From positions 186,001-250,000 of the IMG/VR virus record IMGVR_UViG_3300034072_001021: DNA of 64,000 nucleotides; one strand, written 5' to 3'. Made by a program: the position numbers and the translations under genes. How positions within the stretch are numbered: position 1 is the first letter of the stretch; every line of letters begins with the position of its first letter. The notes beneath the pieces are model-generated. The model did not search any database. It was not told the DNA's origin and worked only from the letters and a program-made list of their open reading frames with translations. Shown one piece after another: positions 25,070-36,088 of the stretch.

Positions 25070-25082
25070 CTAGAGTTCCTTG

Positions 25083-25109
25083 TTTGAATTTTATTCAGCG
25101 ATACATTAT
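25083..25109 (+). promoter_or_regulatory. TTTGAA-N12-ATACATTAT motif
   Basis: One-mismatch copy upstream of the nvRNAP beta gene. Confidence 0.65.
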
Positions 25110-25151
25110 TCATACGGTAAGCTAATAATACCGATGTGTAAGGGGCACACA

Positions 25152-27350
25152 ATGAGTGACGAAAACCCAGACTATCATCAACTGTCGTCGTATGACGGCA
25201 ACGTTCAGCTTCATCCGGAGCTGATGTCGTTGTATGGTCTCAATCCATTCATTCGTCACATCTCGGCTTCTCGAGCTGCGATGTTTACGAACAACCTTTC
25301 TCAGATGGTCGTCATCAAGAACCCGATGGCCAAACGCATCATGTCCGGCATGGAGCGTCCGTTCGGGGAGACCACCTGTTCCATCGAATTCACCGATGAT
25401 GTCGAAATTCTCGAAGTCATCCCACGATTCGCCCACACGGCAGGTGCTAACCGCATCCGCCATTCACCGCAAACAGCGGTGATCTACGAGAACCACGAGA
25501 CCCACAAGATCGGCGTCAAGATGATTGTCGATTACCACATCTCGCACCAGCACTTTGGTACCGAGTTCGTGCGTAACCGCGATGTCATCGACCAGCTGCG
25601 CCGCGGTGCACGGTTCCGTAAGGGCACCAAGCTCGCCCGTTCGCCATTGATCGATGATAATGGCAACTACTGCTACGGTCGTGAGACCAACGTGCTCATG
25701 TGCTCTGACGTGGCAGGGACTGAAGACGGCGTTAAGGTACGCCGTGGCTACATCGAACAAATGGCTCCTACCGGTTTCGAGACCCGTGTCTTCGAGTTCG
25801 GTCGTGAGTACTTCCCCATCAATCAGTCTACTGTACCAGGCCAGTACAAGATCTTCCCGGACATTGGTGAACGTGTAAACAGCAGTGGTCTGCTGGTGGC
25901 TCTGCGTCGTTATGACCCCATCAGCGCCGTGGCCAACATGACCAACGAAGCGCTGCTGCAGCCGGACTACATCTTCGACCGCAAACGTTTCGTGCAACAC
26001 CTGGATGCGGAAGTGGTCGACATCAAAGTCGAACGCAACACGTCCATCAATATCCCGCCCTTGCCAGTCGGGATGGAAGCGCAGTTGTTGAAGTACTACA
26101 ACGCTGACACCGAGTTCTATCGGAAGATCGTTGACGTCTGGATGGATCTGCGTAAGAAGTGCAACCAGCGCAAGATCCAGCTGGAGCTGGAAGACGAGTT
26201 CAGTCAACTGGTGTACGAAGCTATCGGTCGTGTAGGGCCGGACTATCTGCGCCATGACGGCGGTTTCGGCCGTAGCGTTGATGAAACCATCAAGGTGGAC
26301 AAAGTCTACCGTGGTGTCAAGATCGATGCCTGGCGCGTGGAGATCAAGTTCAAGTACCTGTCGATCCCCAACAAGGGCTACAAGATCACCGATATCGACG
26401 GCGACAAGTCCGTAGTGGTAGAGGTGGTTGATGATGAAGACATGCCGCGCGATGAGAATGGCGTGGTGGTTGACATCGTCGTAGACCCCAACTCTCGCTG
26501 GAACCGAGTAACTCCGGCATCCCCCATCGAGATGGTGATCGGTGCATCTGGCCGTGATCTGGGTAAGCGCATCCAAGCCTCGTTCGGCTACGACATGAAT
26601 GTCCAGCTGAAAGAAGAAGAGTGCGAAGATGCGGTGTATCGTCCTGAGAACCTCGAACTGGTCAAGGCAGCTTATGCTGAACTGCTCGAGTACTACAAGG
26701 TCGTAGCGCCATTCCAGTACGAAGACATGACAGATCCTGAGTTCCTGGCGAAGAACCCGGAGCACATGTACGATCATGTCAAGTCCGTGCTGCTGGATCA
26801 CATGTACGGGCTGTATCTGTACATGCCGACCAACAACCCAGTCCATATGCCGACTGTGATCTCGACGATCCGCAAGCGCTGGCCGCCGTTCATTACCCCG
26901 GTGCGTTTCCGTGGTCGTGATGGCAAGATGAAAGTATCGCGCGAACCGATGCTGATCGGTCCGTCGTACTACATCAACCTGGAGAAGACCGCAGAAGACT
27001 CCTGGATGGCCGCTGCATCGTCGCGTTGCAACGTGTTTGGCACTACTGCGCGTCTGAGCAACAACGACAAGTACGACTCTCCCGGCCGCGAGTCCGGTAT
27101 CCGAGTCGGCGAGTCTGAGATCCGCTCTGAGTCTGCTTACTGTGGCGGTGAGGCAATTGCCGATCAGAAGGATGCCAGTAACAACCCGATTGCCCACAAG
27201 TTCGTGGCGCGTCGTGTACTTACCCATCCGACACCGACCAACATGGAAGAGGCGCTGGATCGCAAGATCGTACCTGTGGGTGGTCATCGTCCGCTGGCAT
27301 ACATGCGGCACATGTTCGCATGCTCCGGTAAAGAACTGACCAACGAATAA
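25152..27350 (+). CDS. non-virion RNAP beta C-terminal subunit (gp71-73-like)
   Basis: KITDIDGDK (GxK motif), DIVVDPNSRWNR and GIRVGESE; uninterrupted. Confidence 0.92.
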   Translation: MSDENPDYHQLSSYDGNVQLHPELMSLYGLNPFIRHISASRAAMFTNNLSQMVVIKNPMAKRIMSGMERPFGETTCSIEFTDDVEILEVIPRFAHTAGANRIRHSPQTAVIYENHETHKIGVKMIVDYHISHQHFGTEFVRNRDVIDQLRRGARFRKGTKLARSPLIDDNGNYCYGRETNVLMCSDVAGTEDGVKVRRGYIEQMAPTGFETRVFEFGREYFPINQSTVPGQYKIFPDIGERVNSSGLLVALRRYDPISAVANMTNEALLQPDYIFDRKRFVQHLDAEVVDIKVERNTSINIPPLPVGMEAQLLKYYNADTEFYRKIVDVWMDLRKKCNQRKIQLELEDEFSQLVYEAIGRVGPDYLRHDGGFGRSVDETIKVDKVYRGVKIDAWRVEIKFKYLSIPNKGYKITDIDGDKSVVVEVVDDEDMPRDENGVVVDIVVDPNSRWNRVTPASPIEMVIGASGRDLGKRIQASFGYDMNVQLKEEECEDAVYRPENLELVKAAYAELLEYYKVVAPFQYEDMTDPEFLAKNPEHMYDHVKSVLLDHMYGLYLYMPTNNPVHMPTVISTIRKRWPPFITPVRFRGRDGKMKVSREPMLIGPSYYINLEKTAEDSWMAAASSRCNVFGTTARLSNNDKYDSPGRESGIRVGESEIRSESAYCGGEAIADQKDASNNPIAHKFVARRVLTHPTPTNMEEALDRKIVPVGGHRPLAYMRHMFACSGKELTNE

Positions 27351-27372
27351 TCGGGAGGGGCAACCCTCCCTC

Positions 27373-29475
27373 ATGGAGATAACGATGCGTCGAATCACTG
27401 CACGCAGTTTCATGAACCTCGACATCCATGCGATGTGGCCACTGCCTGATGAAAAGATGGAAGTGGAATTCGATGACGGTGTCATCGAGACCAACACTCG
27501 CCGCATGGTGCTGAGCTGGTTCTGTTGGGAACTGCATCGTAAGTTCCCACTCACCCCGTTGAACAAATCCCACTATGTGGGCAATGGGTTCCCGAGTGCG
27601 GACATGGTGCCGAAAACCATCTCCAACATCGTCCACGACCTCCACTACACCTACTTCGGTGACGGTCATCCTGAGATCCGTGATCACGATGCTGTGTATG
27701 ATCGTGAAGAGGTATGGCGGGTCGTTAAGGATGTAGGTAACGAGATCTACAACGTCCTGTCGATCAACCTGGAAGAGTGGCAAGTATCGATCAACGCGTT
27801 CCATCTGGACGAGCTGTTCTGGTACGAACCTATCGTCAAGATCCGCGACTCGCTGGAGCCTACCCAGATCTCCATCAGCCATGCGCTCGATGCAGCTGGG
27901 CAGATCCTGATGAAAGATCCGGCGATTCTGCACAACCCGATCGTTCGGGGCCTGCGCAGTAAGCAGATCAAGATGGGCCAGTTCCTGCAGATCCTGGTGT
28001 GCCTGGGCTTCCGAGACGACCTGGATCAGACCATCTTCCGGAAGCCGGTGATCAAGGGCTTCTATGAAGGTCTGACCACCTTGCACGATATCATGATCGA
28101 GTCGTGCTCGGCCAAGAAGGCGCTGATGTTCACCAAGAAGCCTCTGCAGATCGTAGAGTACTTTAACCGTAAGATGCAGCTGTCTACGGTGGTGGTCGAT
28201 AAGCTCCTCTGGGAAGACTGTGGGTCGGATCGCTACTCCGAGATCTACGTGGACTCCGTGATCCTGCCGCACCTGGAAGGTAAGCTGTACCTGGGCTCCA
28301 ATGGTAAGCTGACGCCGGTACGTCAAGATGACCACAAGCTGGTGGGTAAAACCATCAAGATGCGCTCTGCGTTCAACTGCAAGCATCGTGGCGAAGGGGC
28401 TGTCTGTCGTGTCTGCTTCGGTGAACTGGCTTGGTCGATTCCTCGCTTCACTTCCCTCGGTCACACCTGTGCTACCGAACTGTGCCGTGAGGGTTCTCAG
28501 CGTACGCTGTCCGTCAAGCACTTGGACGGTAGTTCGATGGTGGAGGTCATCGAGATCCCGGAAGAGTATCAGTCGTACATCGAAGTCTGCGCAGCCAACA
28601 CCGACGCCGATGGCGATGGTAACGTGGAACTGCAAGTGGACGTCGAGCTACTCGGTGAAGAGATCCCGCAGAGTGCCGATGAAAGTTCGCTGATCAAGTT
28701 CAACTCGCGTATCGCCAAGATGACCCCCATGCTCATCCTGAAGTCGACTCCCGAGAAGAATATCGAGAACGCGTCCAACCTGGTGAACCTGAACAAGGAC
28801 ACCAACATCAAGCACCTGAACATCCATCGCTTCACTGCGTTCCGTGAAGTGCAGTTGCGGATGGTCAACCTGCGTGAAGAAGCCACTGAGGTCTACGTCC
28901 CGGTAAGCCAGGGTGCCCGTCTGGGTTCCTTGACCCGCCTGCTCCTGAACCACATTCAGGAAAATGGCTACACTGTCGACGAGAACGGTGACTTCTGCAT
29001 CGACCTGAGCAACTGGGACTTCTCGTCCCCGGCGTTCAGCCTGCCGCGTCGTCATGCCAGTACGCTGGACTTCATGGCAGAGGTCGAGGCATTCATTCGC
29101 TCGCCGTCCAAGAAGTCTGAGCGCAATGGCTTTGCTGGCCGTATGCTCACCAGTTACACCGACCCTGTGACGGCACTGGTAGACTTCAGCGATCTGGTCA
29201 ACTCAAAGCTGCGTGTTAACATCGCGCCCTTGGAGGTAATCCTGCTGAGTCTCATGCGTCCTGCCGATGATCCTGACGACTATAACCTTCCGGATTACGA
29301 TCGCCCGATCAAGTTCGAAGAACATCGTCGGCTGATCCAGGAACGCTCCGCTGGCCAGATCTTCGCCTACGAACGGCAACCGGACTACATCGAGGATGTC
29401 AACGCGTATTCGCCGCACAAGCGCACGCCCGGCCTGCTCGATCCGTTTGTGTTCCCTGAGGTGATCAATACCTGA
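27373..29475 (+). CDS. non-virion RNAP beta' C-terminal subunit (gp74-like)
   Basis: RSAFNC...VCRVCFG Zn site, LCREGSQRTLSVKH, synteny. Confidence 0.9.
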   Translation: MEITMRRITARSFMNLDIHAMWPLPDEKMEVEFDDGVIETNTRRMVLSWFCWELHRKFPLTPLNKSHYVGNGFPSADMVPKTISNIVHDLHYTYFGDGHPEIRDHDAVYDREEVWRVVKDVGNEIYNVLSINLEEWQVSINAFHLDELFWYEPIVKIRDSLEPTQISISHALDAAGQILMKDPAILHNPIVRGLRSKQIKMGQFLQILVCLGFRDDLDQTIFRKPVIKGFYEGLTTLHDIMIESCSAKKALMFTKKPLQIVEYFNRKMQLSTVVVDKLLWEDCGSDRYSEIYVDSVILPHLEGKLYLGSNGKLTPVRQDDHKLVGKTIKMRSAFNCKHRGEGAVCRVCFGELAWSIPRFTSLGHTCATELCREGSQRTLSVKHLDGSSMVEVIEIPEEYQSYIEVCAANTDADGDGNVELQVDVELLGEEIPQSADESSLIKFNSRIAKMTPMLILKSTPEKNIENASNLVNLNKDTNIKHLNIHRFTAFREVQLRMVNLREEATEVYVPVSQGARLGSLTRLLLNHIQENGYTVDENGDFCIDLSNWDFSSPAFSLPRRHASTLDFMAEVEAFIRSPSKKSERNGFAGRMLTSYTDPVTALVDFSDLVNSKLRVNIAPLEVILLSLMRPADDPDDYNLPDYDRPIKFEEHRRLIQERSAGQIFAYERQPDYIEDVNAYSPHKRTPGLLDPFVFPEVINT

Positions 29476-29487
29476 GCTTAACAAATC

Positions 29488-29520
29488 GAAGGGAGGGCAA
29501 CCTCCCTTCTTCTTTTTCGT
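29488..29520 (+). terminator. Rho-independent terminator
   Basis: gaagggagg-gcaa-cctcccttc followed by a T tract. Confidence 0.7.
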
Positions 29521-29653
29521 TTGGAGGTTTATGGTGTATGTGGAAGGCGTGGGACTATATAGGATTTCTATGGACGTCCTTGGACTTGTTTTTTGATAAC
29601 AATGTAGGGATTCTTATGTAGAAAGGGTTTATGCGGGTTAACAGGGCATTCCA

Positions 29654-31810
29654 ATGAAAATCGATGTGTATAGTCATGCCATCCGTGTAACTGATGTCAT
29701 TACAGATCGCGACTTGCAAGCAATGATGTCGTTCTGTCGTCCGTTGGTTGAATACGGATTCGAGAAGAAAGGGAAGCGGTTTGTCCCTAAGGGTCTCCGT
29801 ACATACGCGTCTGCAACACGTAATCGCAAAGAGTTCGGTTTTCATCGGAATCAACTGCAAGATTTGAAACGCCATTTGTTTCAGAATCATGGTTACGTGG
29901 AGCGACTCGTTCCGATAACTTATCATCCTATCGAAGAGATCAAGGTCGAGAAAGTTGAATTTGAAATCCGCAAGATGCATTCTCCTCGTGAGAAGCAGGT
30001 GGGTATCATCGACTACGTACTGGATGATGAGAATCCTGCATGGGATGCCATCATTAAGATGGTTACGTTGCAGACAGGTGGTGGTAAAGCACTGTCAGTA
30101 AAAACACCAGTACGTATACCTGGTGGCTGGAAGCTGATGGGTCAGTTGAAGGTGGGTGATGAGATCATTGCTCGCGACGGATCAACGACCACAGTGAAAG
30201 GATATTATCCTCAAGGCCCGAGAAAGATGTACCGGGTTACATTTGAGGATGGTCGATGGGTCGACGCTGACCTTGAACATCTGTGGTATGTCCAGACATT
30301 CTCTGGATGGAGGACGGTCACTACCGAGACCATCATGTCCATGATGAGTCGTCGGGCCGCTGTGAGCATTCCGCTTATTGAGCCAGAACGAGATAAGCTC
30401 AGGGAGCGCTTTGTCTCCATTGTCAGAGCACTCGGAACTGCTAAAGACGGTACATTCACAGTTAAAACCACCGATGCCAACAAACTGGCCTATCAGGTCC
30501 GTTCTGTAGGCGGTAAAGCATCCGTCCGGGACATGGGCGACGGGTATTCCGCAGTCACTGTGGAGAAGCGTCCCAAAGAAAGAACACTGGCTATCCGCTC
30601 TATTGTTCCAGTAGGTGTCGAGGAAGCTGCATGTATCGAAATCCACCACGAAGAAAAGCTTTACGTTGTGAAGGACTTCATTGTCACCCACAACACCTTC
30701 GTGGCTCAGTACTGCATGAACCAGCTAGGTGCACGCACCATCATCCACTTCAAGGGTGGTTACGTGCAGCGTTGGAAAGACGATCTGGAGGAAACCTTCA
30801 ACTTCAAACGTGGGGAGTTCCTGATTGTCCGTGGCTCCAAAGATCTGGCAGCATTGCAGCAGATGAGTCTTGATGGTGACCTGAAAGCTAAAGTCATTAT
30901 CATCACTTCGGCTACGATGCGTGATTACATCAAGGACTACGAAGAATCCAACGGACATAGCAAGCAGTTCCCAATCAAGCCTATCGATTTCTACCCGAAA
31001 TTGGGTATTGGCTTCCGGGTCACTGACGAACTGCACCAAGAGTTCCACAACAACTACAGGATCGACCTCTATACCCACGTGCCCAAGTCGCTTGGTCTGT
31101 CTGCCACCATGGTCAGCTCAGACGCTTTCAAGAACAAGGTGTACGACATCGCCTATCCGGTAATGCAACGGCATGACGGTGGCGGGTATCACGTTTACAT
31201 CGGTGTGATGGCTGTACTGTATCACATGGATGAAGATGTGCGGATTCGTTACATGGGTGCCCAAGGGTACTCACACACGACATTCGAAGAATCGATCATG
31301 CGACATAAAGGCCTGCTGAAGAACTACCTCAAGATCATCGATCATGCGATTTACCATCGCTTCGTTTCGGTGCGCGAGGAAGGTCAGTCTGCACTGGTGT
31401 TCTTCGCCAGGGTAGATATGTGCACGCTGATGGTCGAACGCCTGAAGAAGATGTACCCTGAACTGAACATCGTCCGTTACGTAGGTTCTGAGAACGATTC
31501 GTACGAAGACTTCTTGGAAGCAGACATTGCGGTATCGACGATCGGTTCTGCCGGTACTGCTGTTGACAAGCCCAACCTGCGGTCGAGTTTCATGACCACA
31601 GCGATCGATTCGCGCCAATCTAACGAGCAAGTACTGGGTCGTACCCGTCCGCTTAAAGACTGGCCACACGTGACTCCTGAGTTCATTTACTTCGGGTGTC
31701 TAGAAATCGATAACCACATGAAGTACCACCGTAACAAGAAAACGTTCTTCCACAGCAAAGTGCTGAGTCATGGGGAAATGATTTCTCGTTACGCGTTAAC
31801 CCTGAAATAA
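29654..31810 (+). CDS. SF2 DExH helicase (gp75-like) containing an intein
   Basis: LQTGGGK|T Walker A split by an insertion; DELH, LSAT and QVLGRTR motifs. Confidence 0.92.
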   Translation: MKIDVYSHAIRVTDVITDRDLQAMMSFCRPLVEYGFEKKGKRFVPKGLRTYASATRNRKEFGFHRNQLQDLKRHLFQNHGYVERLVPITYHPIEEIKVEKVEFEIRKMHSPREKQVGIIDYVLDDENPAWDAIIKMVTLQTGGGKALSVKTPVRIPGGWKLMGQLKVGDEIIARDGSTTTVKGYYPQGPRKMYRVTFEDGRWVDADLEHLWYVQTFSGWRTVTTETIMSMMSRRAAVSIPLIEPERDKLRERFVSIVRALGTAKDGTFTVKTTDANKLAYQVRSVGGKASVRDMGDGYSAVTVEKRPKERTLAIRSIVPVGVEEAACIEIHHEEKLYVVKDFIVTHNTFVAQYCMNQLGARTIIHFKGGYVQRWKDDLEETFNFKRGEFLIVRGSKDLAALQQMSLDGDLKAKVIIITSATMRDYIKDYEESNGHSKQFPIKPIDFYPKLGIGFRVTDELHQEFHNNYRIDLYTHVPKSLGLSATMVSSDAFKNKVYDIAYPVMQRHDGGGYHVYIGVMAVLYHMDEDVRIRYMGAQGYSHTTFEESIMRHKGLLKNYLKIIDHAIYHRFVSVREEGQSALVFFARVDMCTLMVERLKKMYPELNIVRYVGSENDSYEDFLEADIAVSTIGSAGTAVDKPNLRSSFMTTAIDSRQSNEQVLGRTRPLKDWPHVTPEFIYFGCLEIDNHMKYHRNKKTFFHSKVLSHGEMISRYALTLK
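30089..30694 (+). mobile_element. 202-aa Ala-start (class 3-type) intein in the Walker A of the helicase
   Basis: Starts ALSVKTPV, has block B EHLW and block F AACIEI, ends VTHN followed by Thr. Removing it restores GGGKT. Confidence 0.93.
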
Positions 31811-33217: not shown

Positions 33218-36088
33218 TTATAATCCGTAATATGCCAGCACATTTTGACGGGACTTCTCGTTAGGGATGTCCTTCAGCACGTCTTCCCACTTGATCAGAC
33301 GCTTCACAGCCAGGTCACGCTTTTCCGGATCAGCAGTCGACATCAGCACCGAGGTCAGGTTGTTGAAGTTACGCAGGCCTTTGGTACCGATGGCCATCTG
33401 ACCAACACCGGTGTAGATCTTCTTGGCCGAGCAGATATCTTTGCTGTGCTCGTGGAAGAAGTTCAGCAGCTCAGTCCAGCCTTGGACGAAGTCTTCGCCA
33501 TCCAGACGCAGGACACGACTGATGCAGCGATCCAGCAGGGTCTGGTACGGCGCTGCTTTCACAGCGTTGTCACCAGCTTCATCACGACCTTTGGCGTAGC
33601 TCTTCAGGTCTTCGCTCACGAACTTGACAGTCATCGTCATTGACTCCTCATGAATGTCACTGATACGCTTCTTAATGGAAGCAGCGTCCAGTTGGGTTGA
33701 AATACTGAACAGACGAGCAGCACGACTTGCAAGTGCAGCTTCATCTGTGTTGATGCCTGGAAGGATCTGACCACGGGCCCAAGCTTTGATCTCGCGCTTA
33801 GTCCAGTGTTCTACCTTACGATGGTCACGGTTCCGATCGCGGACGTAGATGCCCGACGGTGTGGATGGAACCCGAATACCGTTGAGAACATAAGATCTGG
33901 CATCTTCACGGTACCAGAAGACCGGTACTTTGAATCTGACGTAGATCTCTTCCCAGAGGTCTTCTTCAGGCGCCTTCTCAGTAGCTGAGATTTGCTTTCG
34001 CAACCATGCCTTCAGTTCAGCGTCACGCCATTCGATTGGCAGCTTATTTGGACGAGTGGGATCATTGATGAACACACCGTCTTCGAGCGCCAATGGACGT
34101 ACGTTGGATTTCAGATAATCAACAACCTCATCGACAGACCAGTGCACAGCACTTGTGTTGAACTGCACGCTAATCAAACGCTTTGCACGTTCGATGCACT
34201 CTGGATCACGCACCGAGAAATCAGCATGGACTTCGTCATTGGCCAAAGCCTTGATTTCGTCCCACGACCATGACAGAGGACTGTCCAACTTACGCAACCG
34301 ATCTTCAACCAGAACACCGTTGGTGGTCTTGAGAGGGTTCACCGAGTTGCGGTAGAAGTTGTAGATGTGATCGTCAGTCCAGTGCGGATCGATCCTGAAC
34401 TTAGAACGGATAGCCAGAAGAACATCTGCTTCAGAGAAGTTAGATGCTTTCACATCACCTTTCAGATACCCGATCAACTCCTCCTCACTTGCGTAATTCG
34501 GATTTGTGATTTCAGGCAGTTCTTCAGCAGGCGTCTCACCATTTGCAATGTAAGCAATCGCTTGCTCATCATTGTAACGGTCTGGCACTCGGAACTTGAT
34601 CCGAGCAGAAAGCAGCACCAGGCTCTTGGGTTTGCTGGTGTTGGCCTTACCTTGAGCCCAGGCCTTCAATGTCTCTGTAGACCAGTCTGCCGGATGTTCC
34701 TTGTCACGGTTCCGATCATTGAGCAGTACGCCGCTGTTAAAGCCCTCTGGGAGCTTCCCTGTAGCGAAGTAAGCATGAAGGTCAACGTCTGTCCAGTTAT
34801 CGACAGCTGTCGTACAACGCGCTCGTAGAGCGGCCATGAGCGTGGCATGTGTGACATTCATCCCCATGGGGATCAGACCCCACACCCAGCCGATCAGCTC
34901 AGACGCAGTCCATTCGGAGGCAGTCAGGAACTTACGCCGTTCGACATTGTCGATGACTTCCTTACCGATAGCGTGACAGAGTGCATTTACCAGTTCTTTA
35001 TCTTCGGTAACGACCACGGAAACTTGAGAAGGTTCTTCGTGAACTTCCTCATTGACCACAATGGGTTCTTCCGACGTGCCCTCACTGACGACATCATCAA
35101 CTGGGAGATCGTCTGCCGATGCAACTTCTTCGACAACGACGGGTTCTTCGTCATGGTCTTCTTGGACGACCTCTGCTTCATCCTCGGTTGGATTACTTTC
35201 GGTAACCTCATCGATGACTTCCTCTTCTACCGGATAACGGGCAGCAAGTACAGCAGACGCTTCAGTATCACCACTTTCAATCAGACTGTTCAGTTGATCG
35301 TCCGAGTAAGAAGCGTAATCATGAGTGAAGCTCGGGACTTCTCCAGTGGACACCCAATGACGAAGCTCGTCGATACCCCAGAACCATTCACCACCAAAGT
35401 GACTGATCGCTGTCTTCAACAACTCGGGGTTATCGGACTCGATCTCACCGAGTACCCAAGCGTGCAGCTCAGGATCACTCCACTTGTCCGCCTCTTTATC
35501 GAGACGATTACGATCATTGACCAACACACCTGTGCTAGTCATTGCCGGATAAACAGATTTCTGGATGTACTGGCAGTAATCTTCGAACGTGATGCCCATC
35601 GGCAACTCGAAACGGTTACATGCCTCATCAATGGCGTACATCTGGTATTTCTCAGGGGTTCCGAAGAACCCCATGCCCAGATCAATCAACTCACTGTCAT
35701 TCCAGTGAGTGGCATCTTTGACCCAGCGATCTGGATCGTTGACGTAGTTGCCGTTGATGGTCTTCTCAGGGACCTTCTCGAAGAGCAGCCAGTTGTCGAG
35801 GTCTTCTTCACCCCAACTTACAGCATCTTTATCTTCGAGCACGGCCTTGGAACGCACTGCTACGTAGAACTCAGTGGTGCCGGTAGTGTAGTTGGTGAAC
35901 AGTTCGCCAGACGCTAGGGCGTACAGTTCAGCCAGACTCCACTCGTTGAGAGGTTTGGCCTCACGCTCAACGTCGCCCACCCAGAGACCGTTACTGGTCT
36001 TGGCTGGTTCTCTCCCGAACTGCTCGTACAAAGAGACTTCTCTCTTCGACCAAGCAGCAGGATAGCGGCCGTCGTATTTGTCGGACAT
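33218..36088 (-). CDS. 956-aa repeat protein (gp79-like position) with a tandem ~80-aa Trp-rich module
   Basis: Seven copies of G-x4-D-x2-R-x7-W-x3-E(L/I)-x-AW, an acidic linker and a helical C-terminal domain. Confidence 0.85.
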   Translation of the reverse strand: MSDKYDGRYPAAWSKREVSLYEQFGREPAKTSNGLWVGDVEREAKPLNEWSLAELYALASGELFTNYTTGTTEFYVAVRSKAVLEDKDAVSWGEEDLDNWLLFEKVPEKTINGNYVNDPDRWVKDATHWNDSELIDLGMGFFGTPEKYQMYAIDEACNRFELPMGITFEDYCQYIQKSVYPAMTSTGVLVNDRNRLDKEADKWSDPELHAWVLGEIESDNPELLKTAISHFGGEWFWGIDELRHWVSTGEVPSFTHDYASYSDDQLNSLIESGDTEASAVLAARYPVEEEVIDEVTESNPTEDEAEVVQEDHDEEPVVVEEVASADDLPVDDVVSEGTSEEPIVVNEEVHEEPSQVSVVVTEDKELVNALCHAIGKEVIDNVERRKFLTASEWTASELIGWVWGLIPMGMNVTHATLMAALRARCTTAVDNWTDVDLHAYFATGKLPEGFNSGVLLNDRNRDKEHPADWSTETLKAWAQGKANTSKPKSLVLLSARIKFRVPDRYNDEQAIAYIANGETPAEELPEITNPNYASEEELIGYLKGDVKASNFSEADVLLAIRSKFRIDPHWTDDHIYNFYRNSVNPLKTTNGVLVEDRLRKLDSPLSWSWDEIKALANDEVHADFSVRDPECIERAKRLISVQFNTSAVHWSVDEVVDYLKSNVRPLALEDGVFINDPTRPNKLPIEWRDAELKAWLRKQISATEKAPEEDLWEEIYVRFKVPVFWYREDARSYVLNGIRVPSTPSGIYVRDRNRDHRKVEHWTKREIKAWARGQILPGINTDEAALASRAARLFSISTQLDAASIKKRISDIHEESMTMTVKFVSEDLKSYAKGRDEAGDNAVKAAPYQTLLDRCISRVLRLDGEDFVQGWTELLNFFHEHSKDICSAKKIYTGVGQMAIGTKGLRNFNNLTSVLMSTADPEKRDLAVKRLIKWEDVLKDIPNEKSRQNVLAYYGL

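What the first reader, a model, noticed from the sequence alone, without database searches (positions are those of the whole stretch)
30089..30694. Ala-start class 3 intein with a decayed endonuclease remnant in the helicase P-loop
Seen: 202 aa inserted at GGGK/T, starting with Ala (no N-terminal nucleophile). It has Trp in block B (EHLW), Cys in block F (AACIEI) and Thr in block G (VTHN), the WCT triplet, and the +1 residue is Thr. The ~65-aa middle (LAYQVRSVGGKA) looks like a leftover LAGLIDADG half-domain lacking the catalytic motifs. Known: WCT class 3 inteins splice through a block-F Cys branched intermediate and are enriched in phage helicases/terminases. Inference: immobile but essential to splice, and possibly a redox or temperature switch on helicase activity.
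Basis: partly seen in the sequence, partly recalled or inferred. Interest (0 to 1): 0.6.

Follow-up and report, generated by a model that had tools for sequence, protein, structure and literature searches.

The report
Class 3 intein splitting phage helicase
A 202-residue self-splicing protein insert (a class 3 intein) interrupts the ATP-binding loop of a jumbo-phage helicase; it is a new member of a well-known kind, it keeps half of its old homing nuclease, and its gene has been swapped between related phages.

Summary
Window 30089-30694 encodes a 202-aa insert placed exactly between GGGK and T of the Walker A loop of a 718-aa SF2 helicase (29654-31810, +). The closest published ortholog, from Pseudomonas phage pPa_SNUABM_DT01 (81% identity), lacks exactly these 202 residues.

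The insert meets every sequence criterion of a class 3 (WCT) intein: Ala1, His64/Trp66, Cys182, Thr200-His201-Asn202 and Thr+1. These residues align one-to-one with the catalytic residues of the MchDnaB1 crystal structure. The AlphaFold2 model (pLDDT 94.9) matches solved class 3 inteins best.

The middle (residues ~101-159) is homologous to the second half of the LAGLIDADG endonuclease found in full-size relatives (blocks E and H). The first half (blocks C and D) is deleted. This remnant is under purifying selection, so it is not drifting freely.

"Immobile" is not supported. Intein and extein trees conflict strongly. Two helicase genes with nearly identical exteins carry inteins that differ at 44% of bases, with short co-converted flanks. 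Empty, full-size and half-nuclease alleles all occur at this one site among close orthologs.

The redox or temperature switch is untested, and the intein has only one Cys.

Verdict: a new member of a known kind, of modest interest.

The parts
29654..31810 (+). Helicase precursor gene (718 aa plus stop): an SF2 helicase of a phiKZ-like jumbo phage, downstream of the split RNA polymerase beta/beta' genes
   Evidence: ORF list. PHROG 16 'DNA helicase' E 2e-30. The intein-less ortholog hits DEAD/ResIII across Walker A to DELH. Synteny with DT01, phage EL and Aeromonas PS1.
29654..30088 (+). N-extein (aa 1-145), ending in Walker A TGGGK (30074-30088)
   Evidence: Alignment with the intein-less ortholog; coordinates.
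30089..30694 (+). Class 3 intein, 202 aa (helicase aa 146-347)
30089..30127 (+). Block A (ALSVKTPVRIPGG). Residue 1 is Ala, so there is no N-terminal nucleophile
   Evidence: Residue 1 is Ala in 7 and Glu in 2 of the nine orthologs.
30251..30292 (+). Block B (GRWVDADLEHLWYV): Asp61 of the DxxH motif, His64 (B10), Trp66 (B12)
   Evidence: phmmer alignment to MchDnaB1 (6rix) places His64 and Trp66 on its His65 and Trp67. Their roles in MchDnaB1 are described in PMC7664689.
30389..30565 (+). Middle domain (intein residues 101-159): a remnant of the second LAGLIDADG half-domain, folding as alpha-beta-alpha-beta-beta
   Evidence: AF2 secondary structure H101-115, E121-126, H127-139, E143-150, E153-159. 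hhalign probability 92.6% against the endonuclease region of full-size relatives. Weak structural matches to WhiA, I-DmoI, I-MsoI and I-CreI, Z 3.6-5.2.
30422..30451 (+). Degenerate LAGLIDADG motif 2 (block E remnant), VRALGTAKDG, with Asp120-Gly121
   Evidence: Aligns to LLQGLMDTDG of full-size relatives. Asp is kept in 7 of 9 orthologs and is Asn or Ser in two; Gly121 is invariant.
30482..30526 (+). Block H remnant, KLAYQVRSVGGKASV (Arg138, Gly141, Gly142, Ala144)
   Evidence: Invariant or nearly invariant across 33 relatives, including full-size inteins. Invariant in the nine orthologs.
30623..30670 (+). Block F, with Cys182 (F4; codon 30632-30634), the predicted branch-point nucleophile
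   Evidence: Cys182 aligns to Cys124 of MchDnaB1 (PMC7664689). It is invariant in 33 relatives.
30674..30694 (+). Block G, DFIVTHN: Thr200 (G5), His201 (G6), Asn202 (G7)
   Evidence: Invariant in 33 relatives. Thr200 aligns to Thr143 of MchDnaB1.
30695..31807 (+). C-extein (aa 348-718): Thr+1 (30695-30697) completes Walker A GK|T; motif II DELH lies at 31025-31036

Best explanation
Window 30089-30694 is a splicing-competent class 3 (WCT) intein. It sits in the Walker A loop (GGGK|T) of the SF2 helicase of an uncultured phiKZ-like jumbo phage. The precursor cannot form a P-loop, so the helicase should be inactive until the intein removes itself. The inferred chemistry is the published class 3 pathway. 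Cys182 (block F position 4), assisted by His64, Trp66 and Thr200, attacks the Lys145-Ala146 peptide bond and forms a thioester branched intermediate. The N-extein is then passed to the hydroxyl of Thr+1. Asn202 cyclises and releases the intein, and an O-to-N shift restores GGGKT. The 60-residue middle is what remains of a two-lobed LAGLIDADG homing endonuclease. The first lobe (blocks C and D) and several hairpins have been deleted. The second lobe (a degenerate motif E plus block H) survives under purifying selection, most simply as a scaffold on which the splicing fold now depends (the HINT-HEN 'mutualism' idea). The element is one stage of a homing cycle that is visible at this single site. 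Close orthologs carry an empty site, a full-size LAGLIDADG intein, or this half-nuclease intein. The half-nuclease lineage has been exchanged between helicase alleles by recombination, probably during co-infection, and the cause of the initiating break is unknown. Shown here: the insertion point, the motifs, the fold, the homology of the remnant, the selection pattern, and the intein/extein incongruence. Inferred, not shown: that splicing occurs, its mechanism, the role of the remnant, and how exchange takes place.
For: The insertion is exact relative to an 81%-identical intein-less ortholog. All class 3 criteria from PMC2807308 and PMC3196547 are met. His64, Trp66, Cys182 and Thr200 align to His65, Trp67, Cys124 and Thr143 of MchDnaB1. 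The AF2 model has pLDDT 94.9, and its top Foldseek hits are the class 3 inteins 6riy, 6bs8 and 6rix plus the engineered gp41-1_WCT 6riz. Of the 66 relatives' inserts cut out at G.GK...HN (four of them, P0011, P0037, P0040 and P0075, began at a wrong G.GK), all end VTHN or PTHN followed by T or S, and all but one of those with correct boundaries (P0024, Cys) start with a residue other than Cys, Ser or Thr... actually residue 1 is Ala, Glu, Met, Arg, Gly, Asp or Ser in the listing, and Cys in P0024. Both the exteins and the Hint lobes are under strong purifying selection (pN/pS 0.03-0.22 and 0.03-0.35), which implies that a working helicase, and therefore splicing, is maintained. For the remnant: hhalign E 4.6e-7 to block E plus block H of 26 full-size relatives, and the same columns carry the Pfam LAGLIDADG_3 hit. 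By motif patterns, 28 of 28 reduced relatives keep block H and none keeps block C. The middle domain has pN/pS 0.10-0.41 with p <= 1.5e-4 against neutrality in all 7 pairs. For exchange: L006 and L012 differ at 30 of about 1,545 extein bases but at 266 of about 610 intein bases, with the extein differences clustered within about 125 nt upstream and 35 nt downstream of the intein. The trees conflict with AU p values of 3e-6 to 3e-10. The exact mosaic protein is found on three contigs from JGI and ENA. Among 16 orthologs, empty, full-size and half-nuclease alleles are interleaved on the extein tree, while the nine half-nuclease inteins form one clade.
Against: No experiment shows splicing. Pfam and NCBIfam intein models do not reach their thresholds on this sequence. 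The scaffold role of the remnant is only an inference: solved class 3 mini-inteins of about 125-145 aa have no such domain, and Msm DnaB-1 (139 aa) and Mle DnaB (145 aa) were shown to splice (PMC5222942; chain lengths). Synonymous sites are saturated in most pairs, so the selection ratios are rough. The clades used in the AU tests were chosen after the trees had been seen. One AU test was weak (L006 held with L012 and L013 on intein data, p 0.02). The sequences come from metagenomes, so the hosts and any co-infection are unknown.
Confidence: 0.8

Rival explanations
1. The half-domain is still part of a working nuclease. The single LAGLIDADG lobe pairs with a second copy (an I-CreI-like homodimer) or with a partner lobe supplied in trans, cuts the empty GGGK|T site, and drives homing of this reduced intein.
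For: The intein lineage has moved between helicase alleles after losing its first lobe. The remnant is under purifying selection. Asp120-Gly121 sits at the position of the catalytic Asp-Gly of motif E in 7 of 9 orthologs, and the two that lack it (L012, L013) are the ones whose intein and extein histories agree. An empty target allele exists in nature.
Against: The motif helix is poorly conserved and has a Pro in one ortholog. The Asp is Asn or Ser in two orthologs. The beta1-beta2 hairpin of the DNA-binding saddle and the block D Lys are deleted. No other LAGLIDADG lobe is detectable in the 259-kb genome. Direct intein-for-intein replacement cannot be started by cutting an empty site.
Confidence: 0.07
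2. The intein is a conditional switch. Oxidation, metal binding or temperature reversibly blocks Cys182, so that helicase activation is timed to conditions in the infected cell.
For: The related class 3 Msm DnaBi1 in a P-loop is reversibly inhibited by H2O2 through its catalytic Cys (PMC6195587). Zinc and reactive chlorine are reported to do the same (titles of PMC7360933 and PMC8557812). [quoted passage not shown]
Against: Cys182 is the only Cys in the intein, so the intramolecular Cys48-Cys118-type trap cannot form. Extra Cys residues in some orthologs (position 3, or in the motif helix) are not conserved. An intein-less ortholog and alleles with different inteins coexist, so no particular regulatory intein is required. 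Nothing here tests conditionality.
Confidence: 0.12
3. The intein is dead and the helicase gene is a non-functional relic in this phage.
For: No experimental evidence of splicing exists. Standard intein HMMs miss the sequence. A precedent is the class 3-like Arth_1007 intein, which is a pseudogene (PMC3196547).
Against: All catalytic residues are intact and invariant in 33 relatives. The reading frame is open. Exteins of intein-bearing alleles evolve at pN/pS 0.03-0.22. Arth_1007 lacks both Cys F4 and His B10, whereas this intein has both.
Confidence: 0.04
4. The intein/extein mosaicism is an artefact of metagenome assembly, with chimeric contigs built from co-occurring strains.
For: All nine orthologs come from metagenome or Logan assemblies.
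Against: The exact 718-aa mosaic protein P0002 (= L006) is on three contigs from independent JGI and ENA assemblies. The donor-like intein is only about 80% identical in DNA to the window's intein, so no sampled strain could have supplied it. The flanking differences fade gradually, as in co-conversion, rather than switching at a shared k-mer. Three separate incongruences are seen.
Confidence: 0.04

Closest known systems
Class 3 (WCT) P-loop inteins with solved structures: Mycobacterium chimaera DnaB1 (6rix/6riy) and M. smegmatis DnaBi1 (6bs8)
   Same: No N-terminal nucleophile, DxxH plus Trp in block B, Cys at F4, THN at the C-terminus, insertion after the Walker A Lys, and Ser or Thr at +1. 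They are the best sequence and structure matches.
   Different: They are 125-145-aa mini-inteins whose linker is disordered, while this one carries a folded 60-residue half-endonuclease domain. Identity is only about 20% over the structural alignment. The host protein is DnaB (RecA-fold hexameric helicase) rather than an SF2 helicase. Msm DnaBi1 has a second Cys (Cys48) for its redox trap, and this intein has none.
Pseudomonas phage EL gp040 helicase intein (NC_007623 47888-50170)
   Same: The same orthologous gene next to the RNA polymerase beta subunit gene, the same GxGK|T insertion site, a non-nucleophilic first residue (Met), xCIS in block F, and VTHN|T. tblastn gives 34% identity over residues 8-202. 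From my memory only (not verified here; Tori and Perler 2011 is not held), it is listed in InBase among class 3 inteins.
   Different: It is 241 aa with a longer middle region. The exteins are only 31% identical to the window's helicase.
Full-size LAGLIDADG class 3 inteins at the same site of orthologous jumbo-phage helicases (P0011, P0021, P0023), and mycobacteriophage Bethlehem DnaB intein as the studied prototype
   Same: The same insertion site and Hint blocks. P0011 is 50% identical over 200 aligned residues, with exteins 64-77% identical. The Bethlehem DnaB intein is the biochemically proven class 3 prototype and has a LAGLIDADG domain (PMC2807308).
   Different: They keep both LAGLIDADG motifs (GALIGDG and GLIDTDG) and block D (KFIP), and are about 342-347 aa. 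The window intein lacks about 140 of those residues.
Degenerating endonuclease domains in the homing cycle, e.g. the PhoVMA intein (7qst)
   Same: An intein that keeps an inactive LAGLIDADG scaffold after losing catalytic residues. The published explanations are the homing cycle and HINT-HEN mutualism (PMC8966425).
   Different: PhoVMA keeps both lobes with only a one-turn truncation of block E. Here a whole lobe is gone. PhoVMA is also a class 1 archaeal intein.

Membership tests
Class 3 (WCT) intein | First intein residue is not Cys, Ser or Thr | tested here: met
   Ala1 (codon 30089-30091). The boundary is fixed by the intein-less ortholog, which reads GGGK|TFVAQ.
Class 3 (WCT) intein | Trp at block B position 12, with His at B10 | tested here: met
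   His64 and Trp66 align to His65 and Trp67 of MchDnaB1 (PMC7664689).
Class 3 (WCT) intein | Cys at block F position 4 | tested here: met
   Cys182 aligns to Cys124 of MchDnaB1 and is invariant in 33 relatives.
Class 3 (WCT) intein | Thr at block G position 5, and a C-terminal Asn | tested here: met
   Thr200-His201-Asn202 are invariant in 33 relatives. Thr200 aligns to Thr143 of MchDnaB1.
Class 3 (WCT) intein | [quoted passage not shown] | tested here: met
   Thr348 (30695-30697).
Class 3 (WCT) intein | Hint (Hedgehog/intein) fold | tested here: met
   AF2 pLDDT 94.9. Foldseek gives 57 PDB matches at E <= 1e-3; those listed are inteins plus Hedgehog and bacterial intein-like (Hint) domains, with class 3 inteins on top.
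Class 3 (WCT) intein | Membership of the monophyletic class 3 clade | tested here: inconclusive
   The nearest sequence and structure neighbours are class 3 inteins. All but one (P0024, Cys1) of the relatives collected with correctly cut boundaries share the WCT pattern. [quoted passage not shown]
Class 3 (WCT) intein | Splicing requires the F4 Cys and passes through a block F branched thioester intermediate | not testable with these tools
   This needs a splicing reporter with Cys182Ala/Ser, Thr+1Ala and Asn202Ala mutants.
LAGLIDADG (double-motif) intein homing endonuclease | Two LAGLIDADG motifs (blocks C and E), each carrying a catalytic acidic residue | tested here: not met
   Block C is absent. 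Only a degenerate block E (VRALGTAKDG) remains. No Pfam LAGLIDADG model matches.
LAGLIDADG (double-motif) intein homing endonuclease | Block D (conserved Lys, KFIP in relatives) | tested here: not met
   It is deleted relative to P0011, P0021 and P0023.
LAGLIDADG (double-motif) intein homing endonuclease | Block H and the alpha-beta-beta-alpha-beta-beta lobe fold | tested here: inconclusive
   Block H is conserved (Arg138, Gly141, Gly142, Ala144). The lobe is reduced to alpha-beta-alpha-beta-beta. Structural matches to LAGLIDADG lobes are weak, Z 3.6-5.2, and Foldseek finds nothing significant.
LAGLIDADG (double-motif) intein homing endonuclease | Site-specific DNA cleavage of the empty allele | not testable with these tools
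   This needs purified intein and a duplex carrying the DT01-type empty site.

The most novel reading that the evidence does not exclude
The surviving LAGLIDADG lobe is not junk. A single monophyletic 'half-nuclease' intein lineage, kept under purifying selection, continues to move between helicase alleles of co-circulating jumbo phages. The lobe may serve that mobility, either as one subunit of a homodimeric or trans-completed nuclease, or as a DNA-targeting module that recruits another nuclease (collaborative homing). That would be a previously undescribed way for a reduced intein to stay mobile.
Probability: 0.1. Interest if true: 0.7.

Novelty: new member of a known kind. Interest (0 to 1): 0.35.

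Why it matters
Class 3 inteins in the P-loops of phage helicases and terminases are already well described, so the element itself adds one more example, in an uncultured phiKZ-like jumbo phage. Three things give it some value. First, a set of close orthologs shows every stage of the homing cycle at one site (empty, full-size nuclease, half nuclease). Clear recombination tracts show that a nuclease-deficient intein still changes hosts, which makes this a convenient natural system for testing how reduced inteins spread. Second, by simple motif patterns, all 28 reduced relatives examined keep the second LAGLIDADG lobe (block H) and lack the first-lobe motif (block C). This raises a testable question about dependence of the splicing fold on the endonuclease scaffold. 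Third, there is a practical annotation point. Pfam and NCBIfam miss this intein, while PHROG profiles for terminase, primase and helicase loader hit it. This explains why orthologous helicases are labelled 'terminase large subunit' or 'DarB-like antirestriction' in public records.

Tried and rejected
Pfam gave only sub-threshold Hint hits (Hom_end_hint E 0.0087, PT-HINT E 0.14), and NCBIfam gave nothing relevant.

A profile of the middle domain from nine orthologs searched against PDB sequences found nothing meaningful. Foldseek with the isolated middle-domain model (pLDDT 70) had no hit at E <= 1e-3. VIA-align gave only weak Z values, led by LAGLIDADG-fold proteins. I use these as consistent but not decisive.

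The homodimer prediction with two copies of the intein returned 'no answer' (score 0.00, controls not run). It is evidence neither for nor against dimerisation.

Searches of the phage's own 259-kb genome for LAGLIDADG_1, LAGLIDADG_3, Hom_end and Intein_splicing found nothing. A second copy of this intein, or of a P0011-type intein, was also not found. The Intein_splicing model also misses the intein under study, so that negative result is weak.

Two free-standing GIY-YIG genes exist far from the helicase. I did not link them to the intein.

The 169-aa ORF on the minus strand inside the intein (30182-30691) is rejected as a gene. Its open length varies from 79 to 170 aa among orthologs, and plus-strand synonymous sites are saturated. 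The intein shows no compositional anomaly: GC is 51.0% against 48.5% in the exteins.

Tori and Perler 2011 (PMC3133030) and the supplement of PMC2807308 are not held. The InBase listing of the phage EL helicase intein therefore rests on my memory alone.

The exteins were searched separately by reference, and the natural intein-less ortholog was used in place of a joined sequence. Extein columns were concatenated only inside scripts, for trees and identity counts.
Full report
**Context.** The window is bases 186001-250000 of a 259,140-bp IMG/VR virus record with direct terminal repeats. The region around the finding carries two RNA-polymerase beta/beta'-like genes (25080-27350 and 27373-29475), followed by a 718-aa ORF at 29654-31810 on the + strand. 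The same gene order is annotated in Pseudomonas phage pPa_SNUABM_DT01, phage EL and Aeromonas phage PS1. The phage is therefore an uncultured relative of the phiKZ-like jumbo phages. By DNA, the only phage record matched is DT01, at 79% identity over the C-terminal half of the gene.

**Checking the observation.**
- Window 30089-30694 translates to 202 residues without a stop, from ALSVKTPVRIPGG to DFIVTHN.
- The DT01 helicase is 517 aa and 81% identical. Its alignment shows a single gap covering exactly these 202 residues, between GGGK and TFVAQ. This fixes the boundaries. It excludes an alternative start at Ser3, because the spliced product must restore the Walker A sequence GGGKT.
- The intein-less ortholog gives sub-threshold DEAD/ResIII matches (E 1e-4 and 4e-4) running from Walker A to the DELH motif. 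The host protein is thus an SF2 helicase, and the insert splits its motif I.

**Is it a class 3 intein?** The published definition has four parts: no N-terminal Cys, Ser or Thr; Trp at B12; Cys at F4; Thr at G5. Ser or Thr at +1 is usual, and insertion in an ATPase P-loop is common (PMC2807308; PMC3196547).
- phmmer against PDB sequences finds gp41-1, MchDnaB1 and Msm DnaBi1 inteins at E 6e-10 to 4e-8.
- In the printed alignment to MchDnaB1, His64, Trp66, Cys182 and Thr200 fall on His65, Trp67, Cys124 and Thr143. PMC7664689 describes exactly these residues as the catalytic triad plus the WCT Trp.
- An AlphaFold2 model built on 33 relatives has mean pLDDT 94.9. Its best Foldseek matches are the class 3 inteins 6riy, 6bs8 and 6rix and the engineered gp41-1_WCT 6riz, at E about 1e-8.
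- The word search retrieved 76 proteins with a related insert. I cut out 66 inserts at G.GK...HN. Four of them (P0011, P0037, P0040, P0075) began at a wrong G.GK. All 66 end VTHN or PTHN followed by T or S. Among those with correct boundaries, the first residue is a non-nucleophile in most, Ser in several, and Cys in P0024.
- Every sequence criterion for class 3 is met. The mechanism itself (obligate Cys182 and a block F branched intermediate) is inferred from these homologs and was not tested.

**The middle domain.**
- Relatives fall into size classes: about 342-360 aa with a Pfam LAGLIDADG_3 hit, about 230-300 aa, and about 202-230 aa.
- In the multiple alignment, the full-size inteins show block C (for example GALIGDG), block D (KFIP), block E (LLQGLMDTDG) and block H (LVRSLGGIA).
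- The window intein aligns only with block E (IVRALGTAKDG) and block H (QVRSVGGKA). Everything before them is deleted.
- An independent profile-profile comparison was run with the nine orthologs' middle domain against the endonuclease region of 26 full-size relatives. It gives probability 92.6% and E 4.6e-7 over 49 columns, covering exactly block E to block H.
- In P0021 the Pfam LAGLIDADG_3 hit (residues 358-411) covers the same alignment columns.
- Structurally the domain is alpha-beta-alpha-beta-beta, that is, a LAGLIDADG lobe with its first hairpin trimmed.
- Folded alone it reaches only pLDDT 70, and Foldseek finds nothing significant. The exhaustive aligner puts the LAGLIDADG-fold protein WhiA first (Z 5.2), with I-DmoI, I-MsoI, the TliVMA intein and I-CreI at Z 3.6-4.2. 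This is weak but points the same way.
More precisely, it is the second lobe, and a degenerate motif with Asp120-Gly121 survives.

**Is the remnant decaying?**
- Across nine orthologs whose inteins are 52-93% identical, the domain has almost no indels. Gly121, Arg138, Gly141, Gly142, Ala144 and Pro162 are invariant.
- Nei-Gojobori counts give pN/pS of 0.10-0.41 for the middle domain, 0.03-0.35 for the Hint lobes and 0.03-0.22 for the exteins. The middle domain is below neutral expectation in all seven pairs tested (binomial p <= 1.5e-4).
- Synonymous sites are near saturation, so these ratios are upper bounds.
- The domain evolves faster than the splicing core but is constrained.
- By simple motif patterns, all 28 reduced relatives examined keep block H and none keeps block C.
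- The simplest reading is the published HINT-HEN 'mutualism', in which the splicing fold has come to depend on part of the endonuclease scaffold (PMC8966425). That remains an inference.

**Mobility.**
- On the extein tree, L006 is sister to L012 (support 100/100), the window is sister to L008, and L010 joins them. On the intein tree, L006 groups with the window and L008 (97/99), and L010 groups with L007 (95/97).
- AU tests reject the alternative placements: p 2.7e-10 and 1.2e-9 on extein data, and 3.4e-6 on intein data. One test was weak (p 0.02). The clades were chosen after the trees had been seen.
- At the DNA level, L006 and L012 differ at 296 positions. Of these, 266 lie inside the intein. 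The 30 extein differences are all at third codon positions. Thirteen of them cluster in the 125 nt just upstream of the intein and four in the 35 nt just downstream.
- The window and L008 have nearly identical C-exteins (1-3 differences per 100 nt over most of their length), but their inteins differ at 11-33 per 100 nt. Synonymous divergence is 0.22 in the exteins against 0.51-0.75 in the intein.
- The exact mosaic protein is on three contigs from JGI and ENA assemblies, which argues against chimeric assembly.
- With 16 orthologs, the extein tree interleaves full-size inteins (P0011, P0021, P0023), a 228-aa intein of another lineage (P0035), the empty DT01 allele and the half-nuclease alleles. 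The nine half-nuclease inteins nevertheless form one clade.
- The reduced intein has therefore been exchanged between alleles after it lost its first lobe.
- How this happens is open. Possibilities are plain recombination in mixed infections, a break made by another nuclease, or residual activity of the remnant.
- The genome has no other LAGLIDADG lobe. The homodimer prediction gave no verdict.

**The switch idea.**
- Msm DnaBi1, a P-loop class 3 intein, is trapped by a Cys48-Cys118 disulfide under oxidative stress (PMC6195587).
- Here Cys182 is the only Cys in the intein, and the extra Cys residues in some orthologs are not conserved.
- Direct oxidation or metal binding of Cys182 remains possible but is untested.
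- The coexistence of empty and differently occupied alleles argues against a required regulatory role.

**Verdict.** 'Immobile' is not supported at the population level, and the switch is speculation. This is a new member of a known kind. The homologous intein in phage EL gp040 has long been in public records, and its listing as class 3 in InBase is from my memory only. Interest is modest. The homing-cycle series and the moving half-nuclease lineage are the parts worth following up.

Noticed in passing
window 30089-30694, and public records listed: The intein alone hits PHROG families named terminase large subunit, DnaC-like helicase loader and DNA primase (E 3e-16 to 1e-3), because those profiles contain intein sequence. 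Orthologous helicases in several public phage records are labelled 'terminase large subunit' or 'DarB-like antirestriction'. Pfam and NCBIfam intein models miss this intein.
   Followed up: partly
window 29476-29653: Relatives (DT01, L008, L010) have a 93-105-aa ORF between the RNA polymerase beta' gene and the helicase. The window has only 178 nt there, and homology to L008 resumes at 29552, so this small gene is absent here.
   Followed up: partly
L011:2707-3162, and G000:C1:11087-11323 and 76447-76659 (outside the window): One relative has a GIY-YIG endonuclease-like ORF directly downstream of the intein-bearing helicase (Pfam E 3e-6). The window's genome has two free-standing GIY-YIG ORFs far from the helicase. 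No link to intein exchange was established.
   Followed up: partly
window 33218-36088 (- strand): A 956-aa ORF appears to be built of about seven repeats of a module with the recurring pattern NG-V/L-L/F-VNDRNR ... W ... E-L/I-KAW. No function was sought.
   Followed up: no
P0035, P0011, P0021, P0023: Helicases 64-78% identical to the window's carry different inteins at the same GxGK|T site: a 228-aa intein of another lineage, and 342-347-aa inteins with both LAGLIDADG motifs apparently intact. These are candidate active homing endonucleases circulating in the same phage group.
   Followed up: partly
window 25464-27566 and 27220-28635 (- strand): Very long stop-free ORFs (700 and 471 aa) lie antisense to the RNA polymerase genes. 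They are probably a by-product of codon usage in this 52-59% GC stretch, as is the 169-aa antisense ORF inside the intein, which is not conserved in relatives.
   Followed up: partly
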